Source of the DNA: Chlorokybus atmophyticus
Lineage: Eukaryota; Plantae; Mesostigma and Chlorokybus algae
DNA length: 64,000 nucleotides
Direction of reading: 5' to 3'
NCBI GenBank assembly: GCA_009103225.1
Contig: RHPI01003156.1
Coordinates: 1,293,043-1,357,042 of the forward strand
The notes under the pieces are model-generated. The model saw nothing but the letters and a program-made list of their open reading frames with translations, did no database searches and had not been told where the DNA came from. Both the position numbers and the translations under genes were made by a program. How positions within the stretch are numbered: the stretch's first letter is position 1; each line of letters begins with the position of its first letter. Positions 5,900 to 39,144 of the stretch are shown here, piece by piece.

Positions 5900-7205
5900 A
5901 GCAAAGGCATGCATGTGTTTACACGGTGGTTATGTGCGTTCAATGAGGATATGCGCCGTGCCAATCGACAAGTGCTGGTGCTCATGGACAACGCAACGCA
6001 CATCTGCGCGCAAGCCAAGTCGGGGACAAAAGGCAGCTTCAAGTCTCTCATTATGTCTCACCTGACCGGTGTTCTTGCCTCCAAACACAACATCAGTCAT
6101 TCAACCCTTGGATGCGTGCATAATTGCTGCATTCAAGTTGAGGTAAGGTTTGACATCATGTGAGCAAAGCACGTTACTTTGTGAGGATATGTTCGAGTCT
6201 TACGCATTGCTACGCAGGTACATGACCCTGACCGGTGTTCTTGCCTCCAAACACAACATCAGTCATTCAACCCTTGAATGCGTGCATAATTGCTGCATTC
6301 AAGTTGAGGTAAGGTTTGACATCATGTGAGCAAAGCACGTTACTTTGTGAGGATATGTTCGAGTCTTACGCATTGCTACGCAGGTACAAGAAGAAGTTGG
6401 TTGCGCACATGCTTGCAGAGTTTGACGCCAACCCCACTTCGAACCTCAGCAAAACCAAAGTGGATGTGCGCGACGCCGTCATGTGGAGCCGTGAAGCTTG
6501 GATGGAGCTCACTCCTTCTACCATACGCAATTGCTGGCGCAAGAGCAAGGTTATTTTTGCCGATTGGTGTGCTGATGCAATTAATGACAACCTCAACGCC
6601 CCATCCATTCGTCGCGTCATTGACGCCAAGGTATGTAGGCTTAGTTGGTGGATATTGCTAGAACAATGCTTGTGCCAACATTGGTAACTTGCATTGCTAC
6701 TGCGCGTAGGAGTTGGATGATTTACAGCAACTCATGGCGCGGATGAAACTTCCAGCATCAGACACAATCAGCGCCGAGTTTGTGGACATGGATGAGACAT
6801 TGCCCACGGAGGCAACAGCAACGGATGCTGAAATACTGGCAGCTGTTGGTGTCGGGCCATTGTCCGATGATGAAGAAGATGAGGAAGGTAAGTGATGGTG
6901 TGGTGCATGCACTATATGCAATTGCATGATAGCGGTTGTACATGTCGCTAAGACTAGCATGCACAGATGACCCTGACAATCAGCCCCCTCATGCGCCGAC
7001 ATTGAGAGAAGCGATGCAACATGTGGATGCACTTGACGCTTTTATCGTCGAAGCTTCTGAAGACTTTAATGAAATGGAGCAGATGGCGATTAGGAAGTTG
7101 AGAAATAAGTTGACGCATCTTCACATTTTCGGTGTGTCTAGTGCTAGACAGAGCATTCACTCATTTTTTCATCAGCGCGTAGATGATGTAGATGAGGAGG
7201 AGTAG
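5900..7205 (+). pseudogene. pogo/Tigger (CENP-B-like DDE_1) transposase remnant with three spliceosomal introns
   Basis: VFTRWLCAFNEDMRRANRQVLVLMDNATH, then (-/+1 frameshift at ~6067) VFLPPNTTSVIQPLDACIIAAFKLR|YKKKLV...VDVRDAVMWSREAWMELTPSTIRNCWRKSKVI, then a C-terminus PTLREAMQHVDALDAF...KLRNKL...ARQSIHSFF. GT-AG introns at 6309-6383, 6631-6709 and 6888-6966. N-terminal HTH not found. Confidence 0.85.
6061..6388. repeat. Near-perfect tandem duplication, period 166 bp (6061-6222 and 6227-6388), of a transposase exon plus intron
   Basis: The two copies are almost identical (ttggatgcg vs ttgaatgcg), and each includes the 75-nt GTAAGG...CGCAG intron. Confidence 0.95.
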
Positions 7206-23715: not shown

Positions 23716-25567
23716 TTACATATCTAGGGATGGCTCTTGATGATTGGGATGAAAAGCATGTGGCTGGCGGGAATTGGGAGGTGATCTGCAACCAGATCCC
23801 CAGTGTTCCCCGCTGCTGTGCTGACCGTGGCGAGCGTCCCACTGTGCCCGTTTTACCTCCCACTCAATCTGCTCGCCTCGCAACTTCAACTCCCGCACCT
23901 CCTGCGTAGCCAAGCAGAGAACTTGAGACCTCAACGGAGTACTGAGAAAATGACTGAGTGACATGACCATTTGGCATGAAACTTGCACCAGTGCGTGCTC
24001 ACCCCTCTTAACCTGCGGTTCTCTTCGCTCAATGTGTCACACCAGTGTCGCAGCAACTCACAGTCCTGTTCGGTTTGCTTCAGCTTTGTCCTGCAAAGGC
24101 CAAAGCCATCACCAGCAGCTCTCCACATCCATAATGTTGTGCTGAGCGCATACTAGTACAGAACTAGTTCACATACCGAGCGCGGCGATTTTGAAACCAC
24201 ACTTCCACTTGCCGTGGCAGCAAATCCAACTCCTGCGACAATTCAGCTTTGCTTTCCTGCGGAATCGCACAGCGCGTCAAAGAAAGAACTCGTGCTGACA
24301 GCTGTAGCTCCGCAAGCAGCTACATACTGGAGTTAATGTGCTTTGCGACTTAAAACTTTCTTCAAGAAGGGCTACTTGTTCCCGCTTCAAGCGCAGCTTC
24401 TTCTTCGGAGGCCCGGGTTCATCCTCTTCTATTGCCTCAGAACGCCCGCTCACGCCAGCCTGCTCATGATCTCTATGCATCATGTCATAGGAAGGAGCAG
24501 CCTGTGCATACTGCGGCAGGCTAGGCTGGTGCATAGCATGCGCCTGCAGTGCCGCAGGTGAAAGCCCTCCAGAAGCTGCCACAGCAACAAGAACGTCCAC
24601 ATGAGATGGGGTGCATTGGAATAACCCATATGCCAAGTTGGGTGTTTGACATATCAAGCAAGGCAAGGTAATGGCTGTGAGGAAGTAGAAAGAATTGCAG
24701 ACAACACAAAGCGGTTGCAAGAGCAAGTACCACTGTCAAGAAGCAAAAGCTTGCGCGCAGACAGAATTCACAACAAGGAAGCGTCAGAGTTGCATGCAAG
24801 AATAGAAAGCACATGTGACATGAGAACCTACTGGACATGAGGGGAGCCTGGGTACTCAAGTGTTGGGAGAGTTGATACTGCCACAAGCGTTTCACGGATG
24901 ACACATGCACAAAGCCCAGACTGTGTACAAGCTAACGGGCAAACAGCAACCAGTGGCGGCAGCTAGGATTTGCACCTGAGTAGTACGGGTTAGGTTGAGG
25001 CGTCGCAGCTTGCGAAGGAAGAGGCTGCAGCTGGGCCATGCGTGCGTACGCCGCAAGCAGTTCTTCAGAGGAAGGCATTGGGCCGGAAGGAGGCCGTCCA
25101 GTGGGCTGAGGAGGATAGATGGTGTTAAAGAGGTGCCGCAAAACCATGGAATCAGCGGCCATCTGTGCAGCGCCGGGCGGGGGAGGCCCGCCGACGGCAG
25201 GTGACATAGAGCCAGGCTGCGGCAAGGGCCCCAAGCCCAGCGGCGGCATGAGCGGCGAAAGATGCTGTAACCGCGGCGGCATGCCGTGCTGCTGCTGCTG
25301 TTGGTGAGAAGGCACGGGAGGTGGCGGAGGAGGAGGCGGTAGTTGCTGCTGCTGCGGTGGCAAGACCATCCTAGCAGACTCTGGCGGCCCTCCAGCAGAT
25401 GCCCCGTGCGCCACCTGGCCTGGCTGCTGCTGCTGCTGCTGCTGCTGCTCGGCCTGCCCGTAACCTAGCTCTCCCCCTGTCCTTCCATGCTTATAGCGGT
25501 CCCGGGGCAGCCGCGCGGTAGGCAAGCGCTTCTCCACCACGTCAACAGAGGCCGGCCCAGTTTTCAT
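23716..25567 (-). CDS. Homeodomain-leucine zipper class II transcription factor (HAT/ATHB2-like) with a long P/Q-rich N-terminus
   Basis: [26 protein letters not shown]|[27 protein letters not shown]|[28 protein letters not shown]|EVRELK. First true ATG is at 25567. The 3' end is uncertain (possible extra exon below 23700). Confidence 0.93.
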
Positions 25568-27029
25568 CCAGCCGCCTCCAGCCCCCCAGCTGCAAACTAA
25601 GCGACTGACCTTTACCTCCTTCCCCGCTTGCCCTTGCAACAACCCTTACAGAAACCCACACGACGCCCGAGCTTTCACCCGCACGTCCGCTCGCCCGTAT
25701 GCCCGTTAACCCGTCCCTGACCAGCCACACTGACCCTGCCCGCAGCAACGCCGAAAACGCCGCCGCCGGCTACACAATACCAGCCAGGTTACGGTTTTCG
25801 AGTGTTGTACCACTGGGGGGTTGAATGAGTGCGTTATCAATCACGTAACCTCGTGGTTTTGCCCATACCTTTCCAACCTCATGATTATATTATGATGTCA
25901 AGCGCGGATTGGCAGGATGCGGGCTCCGCTTGTCATCGCATGGCATCGCATTGCCTAGCGGGGACAGAACAGGCATTGAAAGACTTTGGCTTCCAATGTC
26001 GCTGTAGCGCGAAGCGGCGCCGAAATGTTGCGCAGCGCGGCAGCCAAAAAATCGCCCTGCCTGCCAGTTTTTGCAGGCCGCGGAACTGGCTTCGGCTCCA
26101 CGTAAGGAAGGGTATCCGCCGCGCCGACGCGCAAGATCCGTACGGCAGGCGGGGCGGCCCCAACCGAAGGGGCCTTCCCGGAAAGCGGAGCCAAAACATT
26201 TTCTCTTCCGCTGCCTCGTTTCGGGTTTTCGCTGCTCTTATGCCTGCCTGCACACAGCGGGGCTGACATGACATGACACTGCGCCGGCCCCAGGATTGAA
26301 TGAAATTGAGTGCATTGAGTGCAGTCAAGTTGAGTTGCGCGGCTGATTGAAAACAATTAATAGTATATTGATTGATGCGGGGCGGGGGAAGCATCGGACG
26401 TGGATTGATAGCTCACGCGCCGCGGAGCGCCCGCTGAGCACCACACGATCGACCCATACATCATTGCCAATGATTTTAGTATTATTTTTTCTGCATGTCG
26501 GCAGTTGGGGAGACGGGGCGCCTCGTTTTTTCTGTTCAGAAGCCGCTGTTTTTCTGGCTCACCTCTCGACACAATCAAAAAGGAGGGTTATCACAGGACA
26601 ACTCTCCACGGAGGGTCGAGTGTAATCGGCCACATGAACCAGTTACATGCCGCACTCACCGGCACATGTCAAGGTAGAGTTCATTTCTCGTGGCCATCAT
26701 GACCGGTAAGCTGTTTCCAACCGACAGGTCTGCTGAGATATTTGCTATAATGCTCCTTGCAATGGTTGGCCAGGCGTTGTCACAAGCTGCGACTCGCAAC
26801 AGGCTGTCGCCAACAGCGCCTTCGGGACTGACCAAAGCGGTAGTTTGCCATTGGATGGCATTACATCCAACGATGACAATCAATCGACAGAACAGTAAAG
26901 AACAGTGTGGCCAGTGCACGAAATAAGCAATCAGTGCTTACGGCCTGCCCTCGCTATAGGCCTGGCACTCTATAATAACAGCCCTCGAACTGACGTACAG
27001 CCTGCAAAAAGCCAACACTCATGAACCGA

Positions 27030-33065: not shown

Positions 33066-36000
33066 ATGCCGCCAAAGTTGAGGGTAGCAGTGATAGGCCA
33101 GTCCCTCTTTGGTGCGACCGCGTACTCGCGGCTGCGTGAAGATGGCCACACCATCGTTGGGGTGTTCACTGTGCCTGACGTCAAAGGCCGCCCAGACCCG
33201 ATTGCCATTGCAGCGGAGAAGGATGGTGTGCCTGTTTTTAAGGTGAGCTGTGGCAGTGTGCATGGAATTACCCGTGTATGCTTGTGTGTACACAGAGGAC
33301 AAGTGTGTGTGTATGCATGCCATGTGTATAGGTATGGGATTATACATTTATGAGCTGCTGTTCGTTTGGTCGGCACCGTTTACAGTAGCGACCAATGTTG
33401 TCTGCAAGCTTTGCCACAACATGTCTGCGTTGTAGTTACATATCGCACTGCAAATGAACGGTTGAGTGCATGCAGTGCCTCCACCCTTAGGAGGGAGGGG
33501 GGGGGGGGGGGGGGGGGGGGGNNNNNNNNNNNNNNNNNNNNNNNNNNNNNNNNNNNNNNNNNNNNNNNNNNNNNNNNNNNNNNNNNNNNNNNNNNNNNNN
33601 NNNNNNNNNNNNNNNNNNNNNNNNNNNNNNNNNNNNNNNNNNNNNNNNNNNNNGGGGGGATGTGTGTGTGTAGTGGTCGAAAGCACAGCATGGTTTCGTA
33701 ACATTGATATCTTGCGTGCATACCGAGCACAGCCAGCATATGGAACACGCACATGAGAGCTGTCGTCCACTTACCTTGTCACAAAGCTCATATGCGTGTC
33801 GCATGAGTTGTCGAGGCGTGGGGTGGGAAAAGGGTGTATGTACGGGGCTCATCACATGCATGGTGGGTAGGTAGAGCGATGGAAGGCGCTGAAAAAGGAT
33901 GGGGGCGCTGTCATCCCCGCAGTGCTGGACCAGTACAAGAGTGTGGGCGCAGAGCTGAATGTCTTGGCATTCGTAACACAGGTAAAGCTACAAGACCAGT
34001 TGCATGATCGACGTAGCTTAGCATACACACATTCGCGCAGAGCAATGTCCTGTGCAGTTTATTCCGATGGAGGTGAACGATTTCCCCAAGCACGGGTCCA
34101 TCATATACCATCCCTCATTGCTGCCGAGGCATCGCGGTGCCAGCGCCATCAACTGGGCTCTCATGTGCGGCGACAAGAAGACCGGTTTCACAGTGTTCTG
34201 GGCGGATGATGGCCTGGACACTGGACCCATACTGCTGATGAAAGAGTGCCCCGTCAAAGATGATGATACGGTCAACACCCTGTACTCCAGCTTCCTGTTT
34301 CCCGAAGGCATCAATGGTGCGTTGACAACTGGTTCATGATTGTTTTGCGCAATACAGTGCCGTGCAATCAGCGTTATGAGACTTGATGCATGGTGCATTG
34401 TGGTTCGTTTGCTACACATGCCCATGCGCGTACACACATTATCAACATGCATACAGACGCATGCATGCACACCCAAGTGCACTTACGCACACAGACATGT
34501 ATGTGCACGCGCACACACATGCCAACATGCCTACACACGAGTGCACATGCACCCACGCATGCATGTACACTTGCTCATACCTGCCAGCATGCTTGCTTAC
34601 AAGTTGCACACGCTACGCAGGCATATCAGAGGCCGTGCAGCTGATAGCTGAGGGCAGGGCCCCGCGCATAACGCAACCAACAGAAGGTGCAACGTATGAC
34701 CCCATTTGGAAAAACAAAGACCAGGCTAAGATCGATTGGTCGAAGACGGCAGAGGAGATTCACAACTTCATCCGCGGCAATGACAAAGTTCCGGGTGCTT
34801 GGGCAAATATCAACGGACAGCAGGTGCGTTGTCATAGTGAAGAAAAAAGCAGGTAGCTGATGTAAACAGACATGATTGGTTGTGTCAGTGGCTTTCATCG
34901 CCCAAAGGTATAACACAACTACTCCCTGCATCAACCCTTGGAGAATGGAGAAGTGCCATGGGCGCAATGCAGCAGTTGCATTGCAGGCAATCGGACTGTA
35001 CATCATACTTGCAATGTGGTGACTCTGCGGTTGTGCCTTGCAGGTCACCGTTTATGGGTCAACATACATCGATCGCCACCATTACTTCCCATCGCAGCAC
35101 GACGGGCCTACTGTTGAGGTTGAAGGCGCGTCGCAGCCCGGCATTGTCACAGAAGCAGGGCTGGTGCTGACTGGCTCGGATGGCAAACGCCTCCTGGTGC
35201 AGACTGTGCAGGTGATATGCATGCACAACCACTGTTGGCACAGTCTATCAGTGCATATAGACATGTTGCCACGAACAATGTCTCTATCAAAGTCTGTCCA
35301 ACCAGGCCTAATGTTCTTCATACCCGAAACAACATATCAATGCGTTGCAGAATGGCTAGTGAGCCTTCTCCTGACAGTTCCCTGCCTTGCGCGTCATTGA
35401 CGCTGATACTTTGCTCTTGCACTGTGTGCATGTCCGTGTGCGTGTGGACAGGTCGGCGCAAAGACGATGCCCGCGAGCAAGATTTTGTCACCAGATGAGG
35501 GCGCTCAAGAGCTCGAGCTGACGCCTGAAGAGAAGAAGCTTGAGGCGGGCTTGAAGTCGATCTGGCAGTCTATTCTAGGCGCTGAATCCATCCGACCCAC
35601 TACAGACTTCTTCGCGTCTGGTGCTGGGTCGATGGACGTCACACGCCTCACAGAGACCGTGCGTGCACAACTCGGTGTCGCAATCACCCCCGAACAGGTG
35701 CTGAGGACAACATCACAATGAATGCCTCAATAGCTACCCATCCGTCACTTGTTGGGTATACTACACTGGCGTGTACTTCCGAGCACGTGTGTATAGCATA
35801 CTCTCTGCGCTTCCGTTGCATACGCGTCTACAATAGTTCGTCTTGTGGGTTCAGGTGTTCATGAACACCAAGTTTGGGGACTTTGTGACGGCGGCAGTGC
35901 TTGCCTCGCGCAGTGGTGGGGAGATTGTCGTGGAGTATGACGCGCATGAGGTGGAGGCGAATAGCATGAAGCTGCGGTTCCCGACACAATTGTTCATTGA

Positions 36001-39000
36001 TGGGGAGTTTTGCAACGCACTGTCTAGCAAGACGATTGATACTATTAATCCAACCACAGAGGAGGTCATTTGCCAGGTACGGGACGACACGTCCCTTGCG
36101 TTTTTGGCTATGCCCAAGGCCTGGGTGTGTGTGGCATTGCGTCATTGAGTGTGCACATGGCTGTATGCACTCTGTGCTATGCTGGTGTTGCTACCCTGCA
36201 GCTCTTAAACTCGCATGGCAATTGAAAGGATCTATGCATTGGACAGCGTAGTAAGTGCACACGCATGCACATGTACACATGCGCGCGTGCGCACGCACAC
36301 AAACATACATGAATGTGCGTGCATGCATGCGTCATGCATGATGCTACTTGCAGTGGGTCAAGTAGGACGATGTGGCATGAAGCTGTTACGTCTGTATGGT
36401 GGCAAAGTGCCAGAGTGCAGGGCAGCTACTTGGTTCCGATGCTTGCTATATTTTGACGGATGGTCATCACATGCGCAGGTACAAGCCGCTGGAGTTGAAG
36501 ATGTGGACGTAGCTGTGAAAGCCGCCAAGAAGGCCTTTGAAACGGGCGAGTGGCGGTCAATGAATGCGCGCGACCGCGGCCGTTTGATGTACAAGCTCGC
36601 AGATGGCTTGGAGGCCGCCAAAGAAGAGCTTGCAACACTGGAGTCACTAGATTCAGGTACCATTTTTCTTCTTTTTGCTTATTTGCATATTGCATCACAA
36701 CATTACATCACCACAAGCAGTACACTTGCATTACTAATATCTGAGATAGGTGCGTCTTATTCAACGCATGCACTCATTTGTTGCTTCTTACAATGCATAT
36801 GCTCAATAGGTGCTGTGTACACGCTCGCGGTGAAGACCCACATCGGCATGTCCATCGACACATTCCGCTACTTTGCGGGGCTTTGCGATAAGGTCAGCGG
36901 GCGCGTGATACCCATCAACCACGCCCGCCCCAACTACGACCTGTGCTTCACCAAGAAGGAGCCCATCGGCGTCGTCGGCCTCGTCATTCCCTGGAACTAC
37001 CCCCTCATGATGCTCGCGTGGAAAATGGCCGCTGCCCTTGCGGCTGGAAACACTGTTGTTCTCAAACCTGCAGAGGTACTAGATGTACATTGGGCATATA
37101 CATGTATGCATATGTCTGCTCACATGTTCCAGCAGTTACGTACACCCATATCTGCATCTGTATTACACATGTTTCTGCTCGCATGCACATGTGTACTGTG
37201 TTTTACAATATCCTTGTTTTCTGCGGATGTGCATACATTGATAGGTGTGTGATGTATTACATAACTTGTGTATAGCCATGTTGTAAGTATGCATGCATGC
37301 GTTTGCCTGCGTGTGTGTCTACATGCATGCAAACAAATATATGTAGGTACAACTTACTCATAAACACACACATGCGCACAGGTATGCACGCATGCATGCA
37401 TATATGTATGACCTTGTATGACATCCTTTGGTACAGCGTCTGCAGGATATGACCAAGCGTGTGTTCCAAGAAGCTAACAACCTTTGCCGCAGGTGACGCC
37501 ATTGACAGCGTTGAAGTTTGCTGAGATATCCGCGCGGGTTGGTTTTCCGAAGGGCGTGATCAACATCCTTCCCGGTTTGGGTCCGGTGGCTGGTCAGGCG
37601 CTGGCGGAGCACCCGCTGGTATCGAAGCTGGGCTTTACGGGGTCAACGAAGGTCGGGAAGATTGTAATGGAGGCCGCCGCCAAGAGCAACGCCAAGCGCG
37701 TGAGTCTGGAGCTAGGTGGCAAGTCACCGCTTATCGTGTTCGCTGACGCTGACCTTACGCGCGCCGTGCGTAATGCCCTCGGCGCCTGTTTTTTTAACAA
37801 GGTCAGGGATGCGCGAACCAACACGTTACTCACGCTTTCAAGCACGTGCATGCAAGTGTATGCATGCATACAAGCACGCCGTGTGCTGAAGCATATATGA
37901 TGCCATGCACATCGTGGTCTCTCTCGCATGCGTGCGTGCGTGCATCACACAGGCAGGCGCACACTCAACTGCAGCATGCTGTGGGACATGTTGCCATCGT
38001 TCATGGAAGTTGTTTGCATGTTTGCAGGCTTGTTGTATGGTGGAACGCTTGGGCTCTGATGCATGGTGTACTGCATGCACAGTGGCAGCATCCTTGTGAA
38101 GATTGTGACGATTTGTGTTTGCAGGGCGAGAACTGCATAGCAGCCGGGCGCATATTTGTTGAGGATAGCATACATGACGAGTTCGTGCGATTGGTTGTTG
38201 AAGAAACGAAGAAAATAACCATTGGGGACCCTCTGGACAGGTCAGTTGTTGCTGCTGGCTTAATGGTTTGCTTTAACTGTGTGGAGTATTGTATAGGATA
38301 AGTGACCCGACACTGCACACACAAGCTGCGTCATTGCAGGAGCGTGTCACATGGCCCTCAGAACCACAAAGCCCACCTGGACAAGCTCGTGGCGTACATC
38401 CAGAAGGGCGTGGAGGAGGGCGCAACCCTTGCCTATGGCGGGAAGCGCGTTGACCGAAAGGGCTACTTCTTGCAACCGACCGTTTTTACCAACGTCAAAG
38501 ATGACGTCTTCATCGCAAAGGAAGAAAGGTGTGCCCAATCTCATGCCTGCCTTTGTGAGTTGACTGCACATCTTGTTTCCTAGCGACTAGCACTATGTCA
38601 ACACACATGCGCACATCGCATGGGGCTGTGCGTGTCTGCGTATGTGCGCAGGCACCTGTGTGCATGTGTGTGTAAAAGTGCACACATGTGTTTGTCCATG
38701 CACGCCTACTTGCACGCATGCCCAGGCATGCACATGCGCGCGCTGGCACACATGTATGCACATACACATGCAAACACACGCGCATATGTCTACTCGCTTC
38801 ATGCGCACGAGCTTGCACAAGCACACTGAATCCTCATTCACTCTGGCAGTTTTGGTCCCATCATGATTATCTCCACATTCGATGGGAGTGTCGACACGGT
38901 GCTGCGGCGAGCCAACAACACCGACTACGGGCTTTCGTCCGGCGTGTTCACGCGCGACATCAACAAGGCGCTCCGTGTAGTGGACGGCCTTCAAGCAGGC

Positions 39001-39144
39001 ACTTGCTACATAAACACGTACAACAAGACTGATGTCGCCTCGCCGTTTGGCGGCTTTAAACAGAGCGGCTTCGGCAAAGACTTGGGCGAAGAAGCGCTCA
39101 ATGAATACCTGCAAACAAAAGCCGTTACCATTGAGTACTCATAG
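33066..39144 (+). CDS. ALDH1L1: 10-formyltetrahydrofolate dehydrogenase (ALDH1L/FDH): formyltransferase/hydrolase, acyl-carrier and ALDH domains, many exons
   Basis: [16 protein letters not shown]; [19 protein letters not shown]; WADDGLDTG; FLFPEGI; [14 protein letters not shown]; [15 protein letters not shown] (Ser at 35629-35631); [12 protein letters not shown]; FTGST; LELGGKSP; GENCIAAGR (Cys at 38134-38136); EESFGPIM; [41 protein letters not shown]. The gene symbol marks family membership, not proven L1 orthology. Confidence 0.97.
33522..33653. other. Assembly gap (132 N) flanked by poly-G, inside ALDH1L intron 1
   Basis: Run of N in the sequence. Confidence 1.

What the first reader, a model, noticed from the sequence alone, without database searches (positions are those of the whole stretch)
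33066..39144. Complete animal-type ALDH1L (10-formyl-THF dehydrogenase) in a green-lineage genome
Seen in sequence: a full tripartite ORF with the hydrolase His/Asp motifs (YHPSLLP, DDGLDTG), the phosphopantetheine Ser in the carrier domain ([12 protein letters not shown]), and ALDH Glu/Cys ([17 protein letters not shown]), with no stops or frameshifts in the exons. Its introns have the same RY-rich style as neighbouring genes, and those neighbours are plant/algal (MOT1, HD-Zip II, GSIIB), so it looks native rather than contamination. Established: ALDH1L is generally described as metazoan and absent from land plants, which remove 10-formyl-THF with PurU-type deformylases. Inference: this alga has a cytosolic (no transit peptide) NADPH-producing route from 10-formyl-THF to CO2, either an ancient eukaryotic gene lost in land plants or a lateral acquisition. 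It could act as a one-carbon or photorespiratory valve not described for plants.
Basis: partly seen in the sequence, partly recalled or inferred. Interest (0 to 1): 0.9.

Follow-up and report, generated by a model that had tools for sequence, protein, structure and literature searches.

The report
Expressed ALDH1L folate enzyme in Chlorokybus
The early-branching green alga Chlorokybus carries and transcribes an intact gene for the three-part folate enzyme ALDH1L, otherwise seen here almost only in animals, and its copy branches outside all animal copies, so the enzyme is probably older than animals.

Summary
Window 33066-39144 (+) holds a 13-exon, all GT-AG gene for a 912-aa protein with formyltransferase/hydrolase, carrier and aldehyde-dehydrogenase domains. 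The ALDH1L catalytic residues are all present: His114, Asp150, Ser366, Glu683 and Cys717.

The assembly gap lies inside intron 1. RNA contigs from two studies join exon 1 to exon 2 across it and show all 12 introns removed without a mismatch.

The protein matches the public Chlorokybus atmophyticus model jgi/Chlat1/3518 except at two splice junctions, where the RNA supports my model. Continuous sequence links the gene to plant-type neighbours, and its introns have the same composition as theirs. It is therefore native, not contamination.

It is 62-64% identical to animal ALDH1L but is not an animal gene:
- It groups with a sequence labelled Luapelamoeba hula (Amoebozoa) and an environmental relative (100/99 support).
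- Rooted trees of both catalytic domains put it outside a single animal clade.
- Only 1 of its 12 intron positions matches the 21-25 conserved animal introns.

No other green alga or plant appeared in the lists I could see. Ancient inheritance with many losses and protist-to-alga transfer both remain open.

This is a new member of a known enzyme family. The gene is already annotated publicly, but I found no paper on it. The scan noted the same stretch once before (s1-177286).

The parts
33066..33242 (+). Exon 1: start codon and the first 59 residues of the formyltransferase-like N domain. There is no presequence.
   Evidence: model; in-frame stop 12 codons upstream. RNA contigs cover it and extend at least 81 nt upstream.
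33243..33870 (+). Intron 1 (628 nt as assembled). It contains the N gap at 33522-33653, which has G runs on both sides.
   Evidence: joint 33240(+2) to 33869, GT..AG, in two RNA runs.
33871..33981 (+). Exon 2 (N domain).
34058..34316 (+). Exon 3: hydrolase catalytic core with His114 (IIYHPSLLP) and Asp150 (DDGLDTG).
   Evidence: Formyl_trans_N 7.8e-29. residue alignment. joints.
34621..34823 (+). Exon 4: start of Formyl_trans_C.
   Evidence: 2.1e-9. The joint supports this acceptor, which keeps 'GIS', against the public model.
35044..35211 (+). Exon 5: remainder of the N-domain C-terminal subdomain.
   Evidence: In one search the record coordinates imply that intron 5 is removed.
35452..35697 (+). 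Exon 6: carrier (ACP-like) domain with the phosphopantetheine serine Ser366 (GAGSMDV).
   Evidence: PP-binding 8.8e-10; best PDB hits are the ALDH1L1 carrier domain 2cq8 and 7rlt..
35855..36076 (+). Exon 7: end of the carrier domain, the linker, and the start of the ALDH domain.
36479..36656 (+). Exon 8 (ALDH domain).
36810..37075 (+). Exon 9 (ALDH domain), ending in VLKPAE.
   Evidence: Aldedh 3.5e-27. The joint 37073(+2) to 37491 supports this donor against the public model. This is the only intron position shared exactly with animals.
37493..37801 (+). Exon 10: ALDH cofactor-binding region and the general base Glu683 (LELGGKSP).
   Evidence: 5.1e-36. ALDH1L1 structures at 1.4e-38..
38125..38240 (+). 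Exon 11: catalytic Cys717 (GENCIAAGR).
38340..38528 (+). Exon 12 (ALDH domain).
   Evidence: 5.9e-16..
38850..39144 (+). Exon 13: end of the ALDH domain and the stop codon (…TIEYS*).
   Evidence: 4e-31..

Best explanation
This is a native, intact, transcribed nuclear gene of Chlorokybus atmophyticus. It encodes a 912-aa ALDH1L-type 10-formyltetrahydrofolate dehydrogenase with no targeting presequence, so it is most likely cytosolic.

The inferred mechanism is that of the animal enzyme. The N domain (His114, Asp150) hydrolyses the formyl group off 10-formyl-THF. The formyl group is carried as a thioester on a 4'-phosphopantetheine arm attached to Ser366 of the carrier domain. The C-terminal ALDH domain (Cys717, Glu683) then oxidises it to CO2 while reducing NADP+ to NADPH and regenerating THF.

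Shown here: the gene structure, splicing, expression, domain order, residue conservation, host linkage and phylogenetic position outside animals. Inferred: the enzymatic activity, the cofactor, the phosphopantetheinylation and the location in the cell.

On origin, the three-domain fusion predates crown animals. The alga's copy is either a rare survivor of an old eukaryotic gene or, slightly more likely given that no other green-lineage copy was seen, an old transfer from a heterotrophic protist. In either case it has since acquired host-style introns.
For: - Gene model: clean, all GT-AG.
- Domains: all four Pfam domains are present, in ALDH1L order.
- Structures: the best solved matches are ALDH1L1.
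- Catalytic residues: all five align with those of sponge, placozoan, hemichordate and gar enzymes.
- Identity to animals: 62-64% over the full length.
- Organism: the protein matches jgi/Chlat1/3518 (Chlorokybus) outside two splice choices.
- Expression: RNA contigs from two studies (2013, 2021) are spliced exactly as modelled, with no mismatch. One 3015-nt contig spans the whole coding sequence, including the joint across the gap.
- Neighbours on uninterrupted sequence: an HD-Zip gene with a HALZ domain, a weak sub-threshold match to a MOT1-type molybdate transporter, glutamine synthetase, RPL19e and a PUF protein.
- Composition: GC3 of 0.67 lies within the neighbours' range, and introns of neighbouring genes share the purine-pyrimidine-alternating style.
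- Location: an in-frame stop 12 codons upstream of the ATG rules out a longer N-terminus.
- Phylogeny: the split between {Chlorokybus, Luapelamoeba, P0289} and 25 animals has 100/99 support. Animals form one clade in outgroup-rooted trees of the ALDH domain (95-96) and the N domain (93).
- Introns: only 1 of 12 positions is shared with the conserved animal set.
Against: - No enzyme activity, cofactor preference or phosphopantetheinylation was measured.
- The matching phosphopantetheinyl transferase could not be looked for, because only this window was available.
- The carrier-to-ALDH linker is less acidic than in animals. Its negative charge is reported as conserved across species and suggested to matter for function (PMC8748788).
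- The absence of other green-lineage copies rests on hit lists capped at 120 rows and 8000 scored candidates.
- The label 'Luapelamoeba' comes from a transcriptome and could itself be a contaminant.
Confidence: 0.85

Rival explanations
1. Old horizontal transfer. The Chlorokybus lineage acquired ALDH1L from a heterotrophic protist, possibly amoebozoan-like, and later gained host-style introns.
For: Chlorokybus groups with the Luapelamoeba-labelled sequence and its environmental relative at 100/99 in the full-length tree. A profile of these three finds nothing else between them (1797 bits or more) and animals (1541 bits or fewer) among 5.8 billion proteins, and no other green alga or plant appears. 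Eleven of the 12 intron positions are not those of animals.
Against: In the rooted domain trees the base is a polytomy. The vertical topology, with Chlorokybus outside amoebozoans plus animals, is not rejected (log-likelihood difference 0.36, p-AU 0.125). One intron position is shared exactly with animals and another lies one codon away. The donor is unknown.
Confidence: 0.5
2. Ancient vertical inheritance. ALDH1L was present in an early eukaryote and was lost in nearly all lineages except animals, some amoebozoans, Chlorokybus and a few others.
For: Animals form a single clade and all non-animal sequences fall outside it. The AU test does not reject the species-tree arrangement. A third, divergent non-animal-looking lineage exists (P0147). 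One intron position is shared exactly.
Against: It requires very many independent losses, including at least three within the green lineage. The branch separating non-animals from animals is short (0.24) compared with branches within animals, which is unexpected for a split as old as the eukaryotic supergroups. No other green-lineage copy was seen.
Confidence: 0.35
3. Contaminant or chimeric scaffold: the gene belongs to an animal or amoeba in the culture, not to the alga.
For: Identity to animals is high at 62-64%. There is an assembly gap inside the gene. Algal cultures can hold amoebae.
Against: The mRNA joins both sides of the gap. Each side is continuous with plant-type genes. Introns and GC3 are host-like. 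Intron positions are unlike those of animals. The gene is transcribed in two independent studies of the same organism.
Confidence: 0.03
4. Recent transfer from an animal donor into the alga.
For: Sequence identity to vertebrate and hemichordate enzymes is very high.
Against: The gene lies outside a well-supported single animal clade in the full-length tree and both domain trees. Animal introns are strongly conserved from sponge to gar, yet only 1 of the 12 Chlorokybus positions matches them.
Confidence: 0.03

Closest known systems
Rat and human ALDH1L1 (cytosolic 10-formyl-THF dehydrogenase; PDB 7rlt, 7rlu, 2o2p, 2cq8)
   Same: It has the same three domains in the same order and about the same length (912 vs 902 aa). 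Identity to animal ALDH1L is 62-64%. The residues equivalent to His106, Asp142, Ser354, Glu673 and Cys707 are conserved. There is no presequence.
   Different: It branches outside all animal enzymes. It has 12 introns, of which only one is at an animal position. The carrier-to-ALDH linker is less acidic. The host is a photosynthetic streptophyte alga.
ALDH1L2 (mitochondrial paralogue of vertebrates)
   Same: Same architecture and a similar identity of about 63%.
   Different: ALDH1L2 carries a mitochondrial leader and arose by duplication within vertebrates (topology). The algal protein has no leader.
ALDH1L-like protein labelled Luapelamoeba hula (EukProt EP01087, P0271) and environmental P0289
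   Same: These are the nearest relatives: 64-68% identical, in one clade with 100/99 support, with the same domains.
   Different: They are known only as transcript or short-contig sequences of uncertain provenance. P0289 is 76% identical to P0271, which is closer than either is to Chlorokybus.
PurU-type 10-formyl-THF deformylase of plants and bacteria
   Same: It also removes the formyl group from 10-formyl-THF through a formyltransferase-fold hydrolase domain. This comparison rests on my own knowledge and was not tested here.
   Different: PurU releases formate and has no carrier or ALDH domain, so it yields no CO2 and no NADPH. Whether Chlorokybus also has PurU could not be checked from this window.

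Membership tests
ALDH1L (10-formyltetrahydrofolate dehydrogenase) | N-terminal formyltransferase-fold hydrolase domain with the catalytic His and Asp (His106 and Asp142 in rat numbering) | tested here: met
   Formyl_trans_N 7.8e-29 and Formyl_trans_C 2.1e-9. His114 and Asp150 align with the animal residues.
ALDH1L (10-formyltetrahydrofolate dehydrogenase) | Intermediate acyl-carrier-like domain with the phosphopantetheine-attachment serine (Ser354) | tested here: met
   PP-binding 8.8e-10. The best PDB hits are the ALDH1L1 carrier domain. Ser366 aligns in the G-x-S-MDV motif.
ALDH1L (10-formyltetrahydrofolate dehydrogenase) | C-terminal aldehyde dehydrogenase domain with the catalytic Cys707 and Glu673 | tested here: met
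   Aldedh on four exons, down to 5e-36. ALDH1L1 structures score above ALDH1A and ALDH2. Cys717 and Glu683 align.
ALDH1L (10-formyltetrahydrofolate dehydrogenase) | All three domains on one polypeptide of about 900 residues encoded by one transcript | tested here: met
   912-aa model. A single 3015-nt RNA contig spans the whole coding sequence.
ALDH1L (10-formyltetrahydrofolate dehydrogenase) | Groups with ALDH1L sequences rather than with stand-alone ALDHs or formyltransferases | tested here: met
   All top hits are ALDH1L. Bacterial ALDH and stand-alone Fmt-like outgroups sit on long branches outside it.
ALDH1L (10-formyltetrahydrofolate dehydrogenase) | Short, acidic linker between the carrier and ALDH domains, reported as conserved across species | tested here: inconclusive
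   The linker is one residue shorter than in gar but has fewer acidic residues (…[12 protein letters not shown]… against …RGEDAEGELQVDY…). The criterion comes from PMC8748788.
ALDH1L (10-formyltetrahydrofolate dehydrogenase) | NADP+-dependent conversion of 10-formyl-THF to THF and CO2, which needs a 4'-phosphopantetheine added by a PPTase | not testable with these tools
   This needs an enzyme assay and a search of the whole genome for the transferase.

The most novel reading that the evidence does not exclude
The three-domain ALDH1L fusion is not an animal invention. It arose in unicellular eukaryotes before animals and moved between distant protist lineages. Chlorokybus is the only green-lineage holder I saw, after an old transfer from an amoeba-like donor, and it uses the enzyme as a cytosolic CO2-releasing, NADPH-yielding outlet for one-carbon units that I have not seen described in plants.
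Probability: 0.4. Interest if true: 0.65.

Novelty: new member of a known kind. Interest (0 to 1): 0.55.

Why it matters
From my own knowledge (unchecked here), ALDH1L is studied almost entirely as an animal enzyme, as a liver and astrocyte marker and a candidate tumour suppressor. [quoted passage not shown] An intact, expressed copy in a streptophyte alga that branches outside all animals moves the origin of that fusion to before animals. It also gives a concrete non-animal enzyme for comparison. For plant and algal metabolism, it raises a testable question: whether this alga can dispose of one-carbon units as CO2 while gaining NADPH, instead of releasing formate through PurU. The scope is limited to one gene in one alga, and the gene is already present, without comment, in the public annotation.

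Tried and rejected
- My first hand-read exon coordinates were off by one or two bases and gave a frameshifted translation. I fixed this by anchoring on the splice-site context.
- A whole-database search with exon 3 alone returned mostly fragments and stand-alone formyltransferases. It served only to obtain full-length protein ids.
- The Atlas search returned only animal clusters and bacterial ALDHs.
- The metagenome scan returned mainly bacterial ALDHs. Its four ALDH1L contigs (L004-L007) are closest to animals.
- The scan of 185,579 prokaryotic species genomes matched only the ALDH domain (residues about 392-903) in its 80 best loci, so no prokaryotic three-domain form was seen among them.
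- Nine literature searches found no paper linking ALDH1L or 10-formyl-THF dehydrogenase to algae, Chlorokybus, protists or gene transfer.
- The two papers on ALDH1L evolution (PMC4414694, PMC3103616) are not held.
- The quick tree that included the long branch P0147 attached it among arthropods. I treated this as a long-branch artefact. In the rooted ALDH-domain tree, P0147 falls outside animals.
- The DNA-run search gave one weak holder (share 0.12) and added nothing.
Full report
**Observation**

The stretch 33066-39144 (+) contains a gene that I rebuilt by hand from the sequence.
- It has 13 exons, and all 12 introns begin GT and end AG.
- It has 2739 coding bases, giving 912 residues and one terminal stop.
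- Pfam, run on the separate exons, finds Formyl_trans_N (7.8e-29), Formyl_trans_C (2.1e-9), PP-binding (8.8e-10) and Aldedh on four exons (down to 5.1e-36), in that order along the gene.
- Against solved structures, the ALDH exon scores best on rat and human ALDH1L1 (1.4e-38), ahead of ALDH1A and ALDH2. The carrier exon scores best on the ALDH1L1 carrier domain (2cq8, 7rlt).

**The gap**

The only run of N in the window (33522-33653) lies inside intron 1 (33243-33870) and has G runs on both sides.
- Homologues show no residue missing between the end of exon 1 (…VPVFK) and the start of exon 2 (VERWKAL…).
- RNA contigs from two runs of two different studies (2013 and 2021, same coded organism) join 33242 directly to 33871.
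- Eleven of the 12 intron joints are listed at exactly the modelled sites, and the contig coordinates imply the twelfth (intron 5). There are no mismatches.
- One 3015-nt contig covers the whole coding sequence and at least 81 nt of leader.

The gap therefore hides no coding sequence, and both of its sides belong to one transcribed gene.

**Whose gene it is**

A profile search returned a protein named jgi/Chlat1/3518/Chrsp23S03699 from EukProt, which is the public Chlorokybus atmophyticus annotation.
- It is identical to my model apart from two splice choices, which leave the public model without 'GIS' and 'VLKPAE'.
- The RNA joints support my version at both places, and so do the homologues.
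- Earlier notes of this scan had already named the genome as Chlorokybus. This identity confirms that independently.

Each side of the gap is continuous with ordinary plant-type genes:
- glutamine synthetase at about 9.7-11.0 kb;
- a homeobox gene whose next exon carries the plant-specific HALZ leucine zipper (8.3e-7, above Pfam's cutoff);
- a weak, sub-threshold match to a MOT1-type molybdate transporter;
- RPL19e, and a PUF-repeat protein.

The coding GC3 of the gene (0.67) lies within the neighbours' range (0.47-0.71). Its introns are rich in alternating purine-pyrimidine runs (0.28 of bases), like the introns of the neighbouring PUF, WD40 and GS genes (0.15-0.65). Contamination or a chimeric join is therefore very unlikely.

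**What it encodes**

In an alignment with sponge, placozoan, hemichordate and gar enzymes, the residues equivalent to His106, Asp142, Ser354, Glu673 and Cys707 are conserved as His114, Asp150, Ser366, Glu683 and Cys717.
- Against these five animal enzymes, identity is 57-65% in the N domain, 39-45% in the carrier region and 67-70% in the ALDH domain.
- Over the full length, identity to animal enzymes is 62-64%.
- The reading frame has a stop 12 codons upstream of the ATG, and the protein begins where ALDH1L1 begins. There is no room for a transit or mitochondrial peptide.
- The linker between the carrier and ALDH domains is one residue shorter than in gar and is less acidic than in animals. 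Its negative charge is reported as conserved across species (PMC8748788).

By inference from the animal enzyme, the protein hydrolyses the formyl group from 10-formyl-THF. It moves that group on a phosphopantetheine arm and oxidises it to CO2 with NADP+. None of this chemistry was tested here.

**Relatives**

Three searches of 5.8 billion proteins list almost only animal ALDH1L1 and ALDH1L2. There are two exceptions:
- P0271, labelled Luapelamoeba hula (Amoebozoa; EukProt EP01087);
- P0289, a JGI environmental contig that is 76% identical to P0271 and 68% identical to Chlorokybus.

A profile of these three sequences finds nothing else between them (1797 bits or more) and the best animal (1541 bits). 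No other green alga or land plant appears. These lists are capped at 120 rows and 8000 scored candidates, so absence is indicated but not proven.

A further divergent full-length form exists (P0147, 895 aa, 46% identity). It is intronless, has a GC3 of 0.85 and comes from an unidentified run. It carries all four domains and recognisable motifs.

Scans of metagenomes and of 185,579 prokaryotic species genomes gave only stand-alone ALDH matches apart from four animal-like contigs. No prokaryotic three-domain form was seen among the 80 best loci.

**Phylogeny**

A careful full-length tree (28 sequences, 925 columns, LG+C20+F+G4) separates {Chlorokybus, Luapelamoeba, P0289} from 25 animals with 100/99 support. 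The branch is 0.24 long. When the tree is rooted there, the animal part looks like the species tree: sponges, placozoan and cnidarians are basal, and Bilateria has 97/95 support.

The root was tested separately for each catalytic domain:
- With bacterial ALDHs as outgroup, animals form one clade (95-96 SH-aLRT) and the non-animal sequences fall outside it.
- With stand-alone Fmt-like proteins as outgroup for the N domain, animals again form one clade (93).

The arrangement expected from vertical descent, with Chlorokybus outside amoebozoans plus animals, is not rejected (log-likelihood difference 0.36, p-AU 0.125). The gene is therefore not derived from within animals, but the trees cannot choose between old inheritance and old transfer.

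**Introns**

I mapped exact exon boundaries for Trichoplax, Ephydatia, Corticium, Saccoglossus and Lepisosteus genes from their genomic loci.
- These animals share a strongly conserved set of 21-25 introns.
- Of the 12 Chlorokybus introns, only one is at an identical position and phase (after VLKPAE, phase 0).
- One more lies exactly one codon away from an animal intron.
- About 0.1 exact matches would be expected by chance, so a single match is weak evidence for a retained ancestral intron.

This pattern excludes a recent DNA-level transfer from an animal. It fits long residence in the algal genome.

**Origin**

Vertical descent needs many losses, including at least three in the green lineage. 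It also fits poorly with the short branch between non-animals and animals.

Transfer needs one event into the Chlorokybus lineage. It fits the strong full-length grouping with the amoebozoan-labelled sequences.

I put transfer at about 0.5, ancient inheritance at about 0.35, and contamination or recent animal origin at a few per cent each.

**Novelty**

The enzyme family, its architecture and its mechanism are known. The gene model already sits in the public annotation with these four Pfam domains.
- Nine literature searches found no paper that mentions ALDH1L or 10-formyl-THF dehydrogenase in algae, Chlorokybus or protists.
- The two papers on ALDH1L evolution could not be read. The statement that the family is regarded as animal-only therefore rests on my own knowledge.

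I file this as a new member of a known kind, with moderate interest. The same stretch was noted once before by this scan in another window (s1-177286).

Noticed in passing
window 33485-33521 and 33654-33659: Long G runs border the assembly gap on both sides. The gap is probably an unreadable G homopolymer inside intron 1, not a scaffold join between unrelated pieces.
   Followed up: partly
window 34316/34621 and 37075/37493: The public Chlorokybus model (jgi/Chlat1/3518) uses different splice sites at these two junctions and so lacks 'GIS' and 'VLKPAE'. RNA contigs and homologues support the sites used here.
   Followed up: yes
window 36657-36809: Intron 8 is 153 nt, in frame and free of stops, so a 345-aa open frame (36215-37252) reads through exon 8, the intron and exon 9. 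Retention would add 51 residues, but the RNA contigs show it spliced out.
   Followed up: partly
window 23931-25642 (-): This is an HD-Zip gene. It has a homeobox exon (…[18 protein letters not shown]…), a next exon with a HALZ leucine zipper (Pfam 8.3e-7) and a long Gln/Pro-rich first exon.
   Followed up: partly
window 6316-6687 (+): An open frame has a weak DDE_1 transposase match (1.3e-4). It is probably a pogo/Tigger-like transposon remnant.
   Followed up: no
L002 69-2756 (Logan DRR337540; protein P0147): A divergent, intronless, full-length ALDH1L (895 aa, 46% identical, GC3 0.85) has all four domains and recognisable catalytic motifs. It comes from an unidentified GC-rich organism. It falls outside animals in the rooted ALDH-domain tree, on a very long branch.
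   Followed up: partly
proteins P0059, P0106, P0062, P0074, P0078, P0092: These stand-alone proteins of about 300-330 aa (Pfam-checked for P0059 and P0106: Formyl_trans_N + Formyl_trans_C) are about 40-46% identical to the ALDH1L N domain. They are the closest unfused relatives seen. Their source organisms are unknown.
   Followed up: partly
L084, L085, L087, L086, L088: The intron positions of animal ALDH1L genes are remarkably conserved from sponges and a placozoan to a hemichordate and a fish. About 15 positions are shared by all five.
   Followed up: yes
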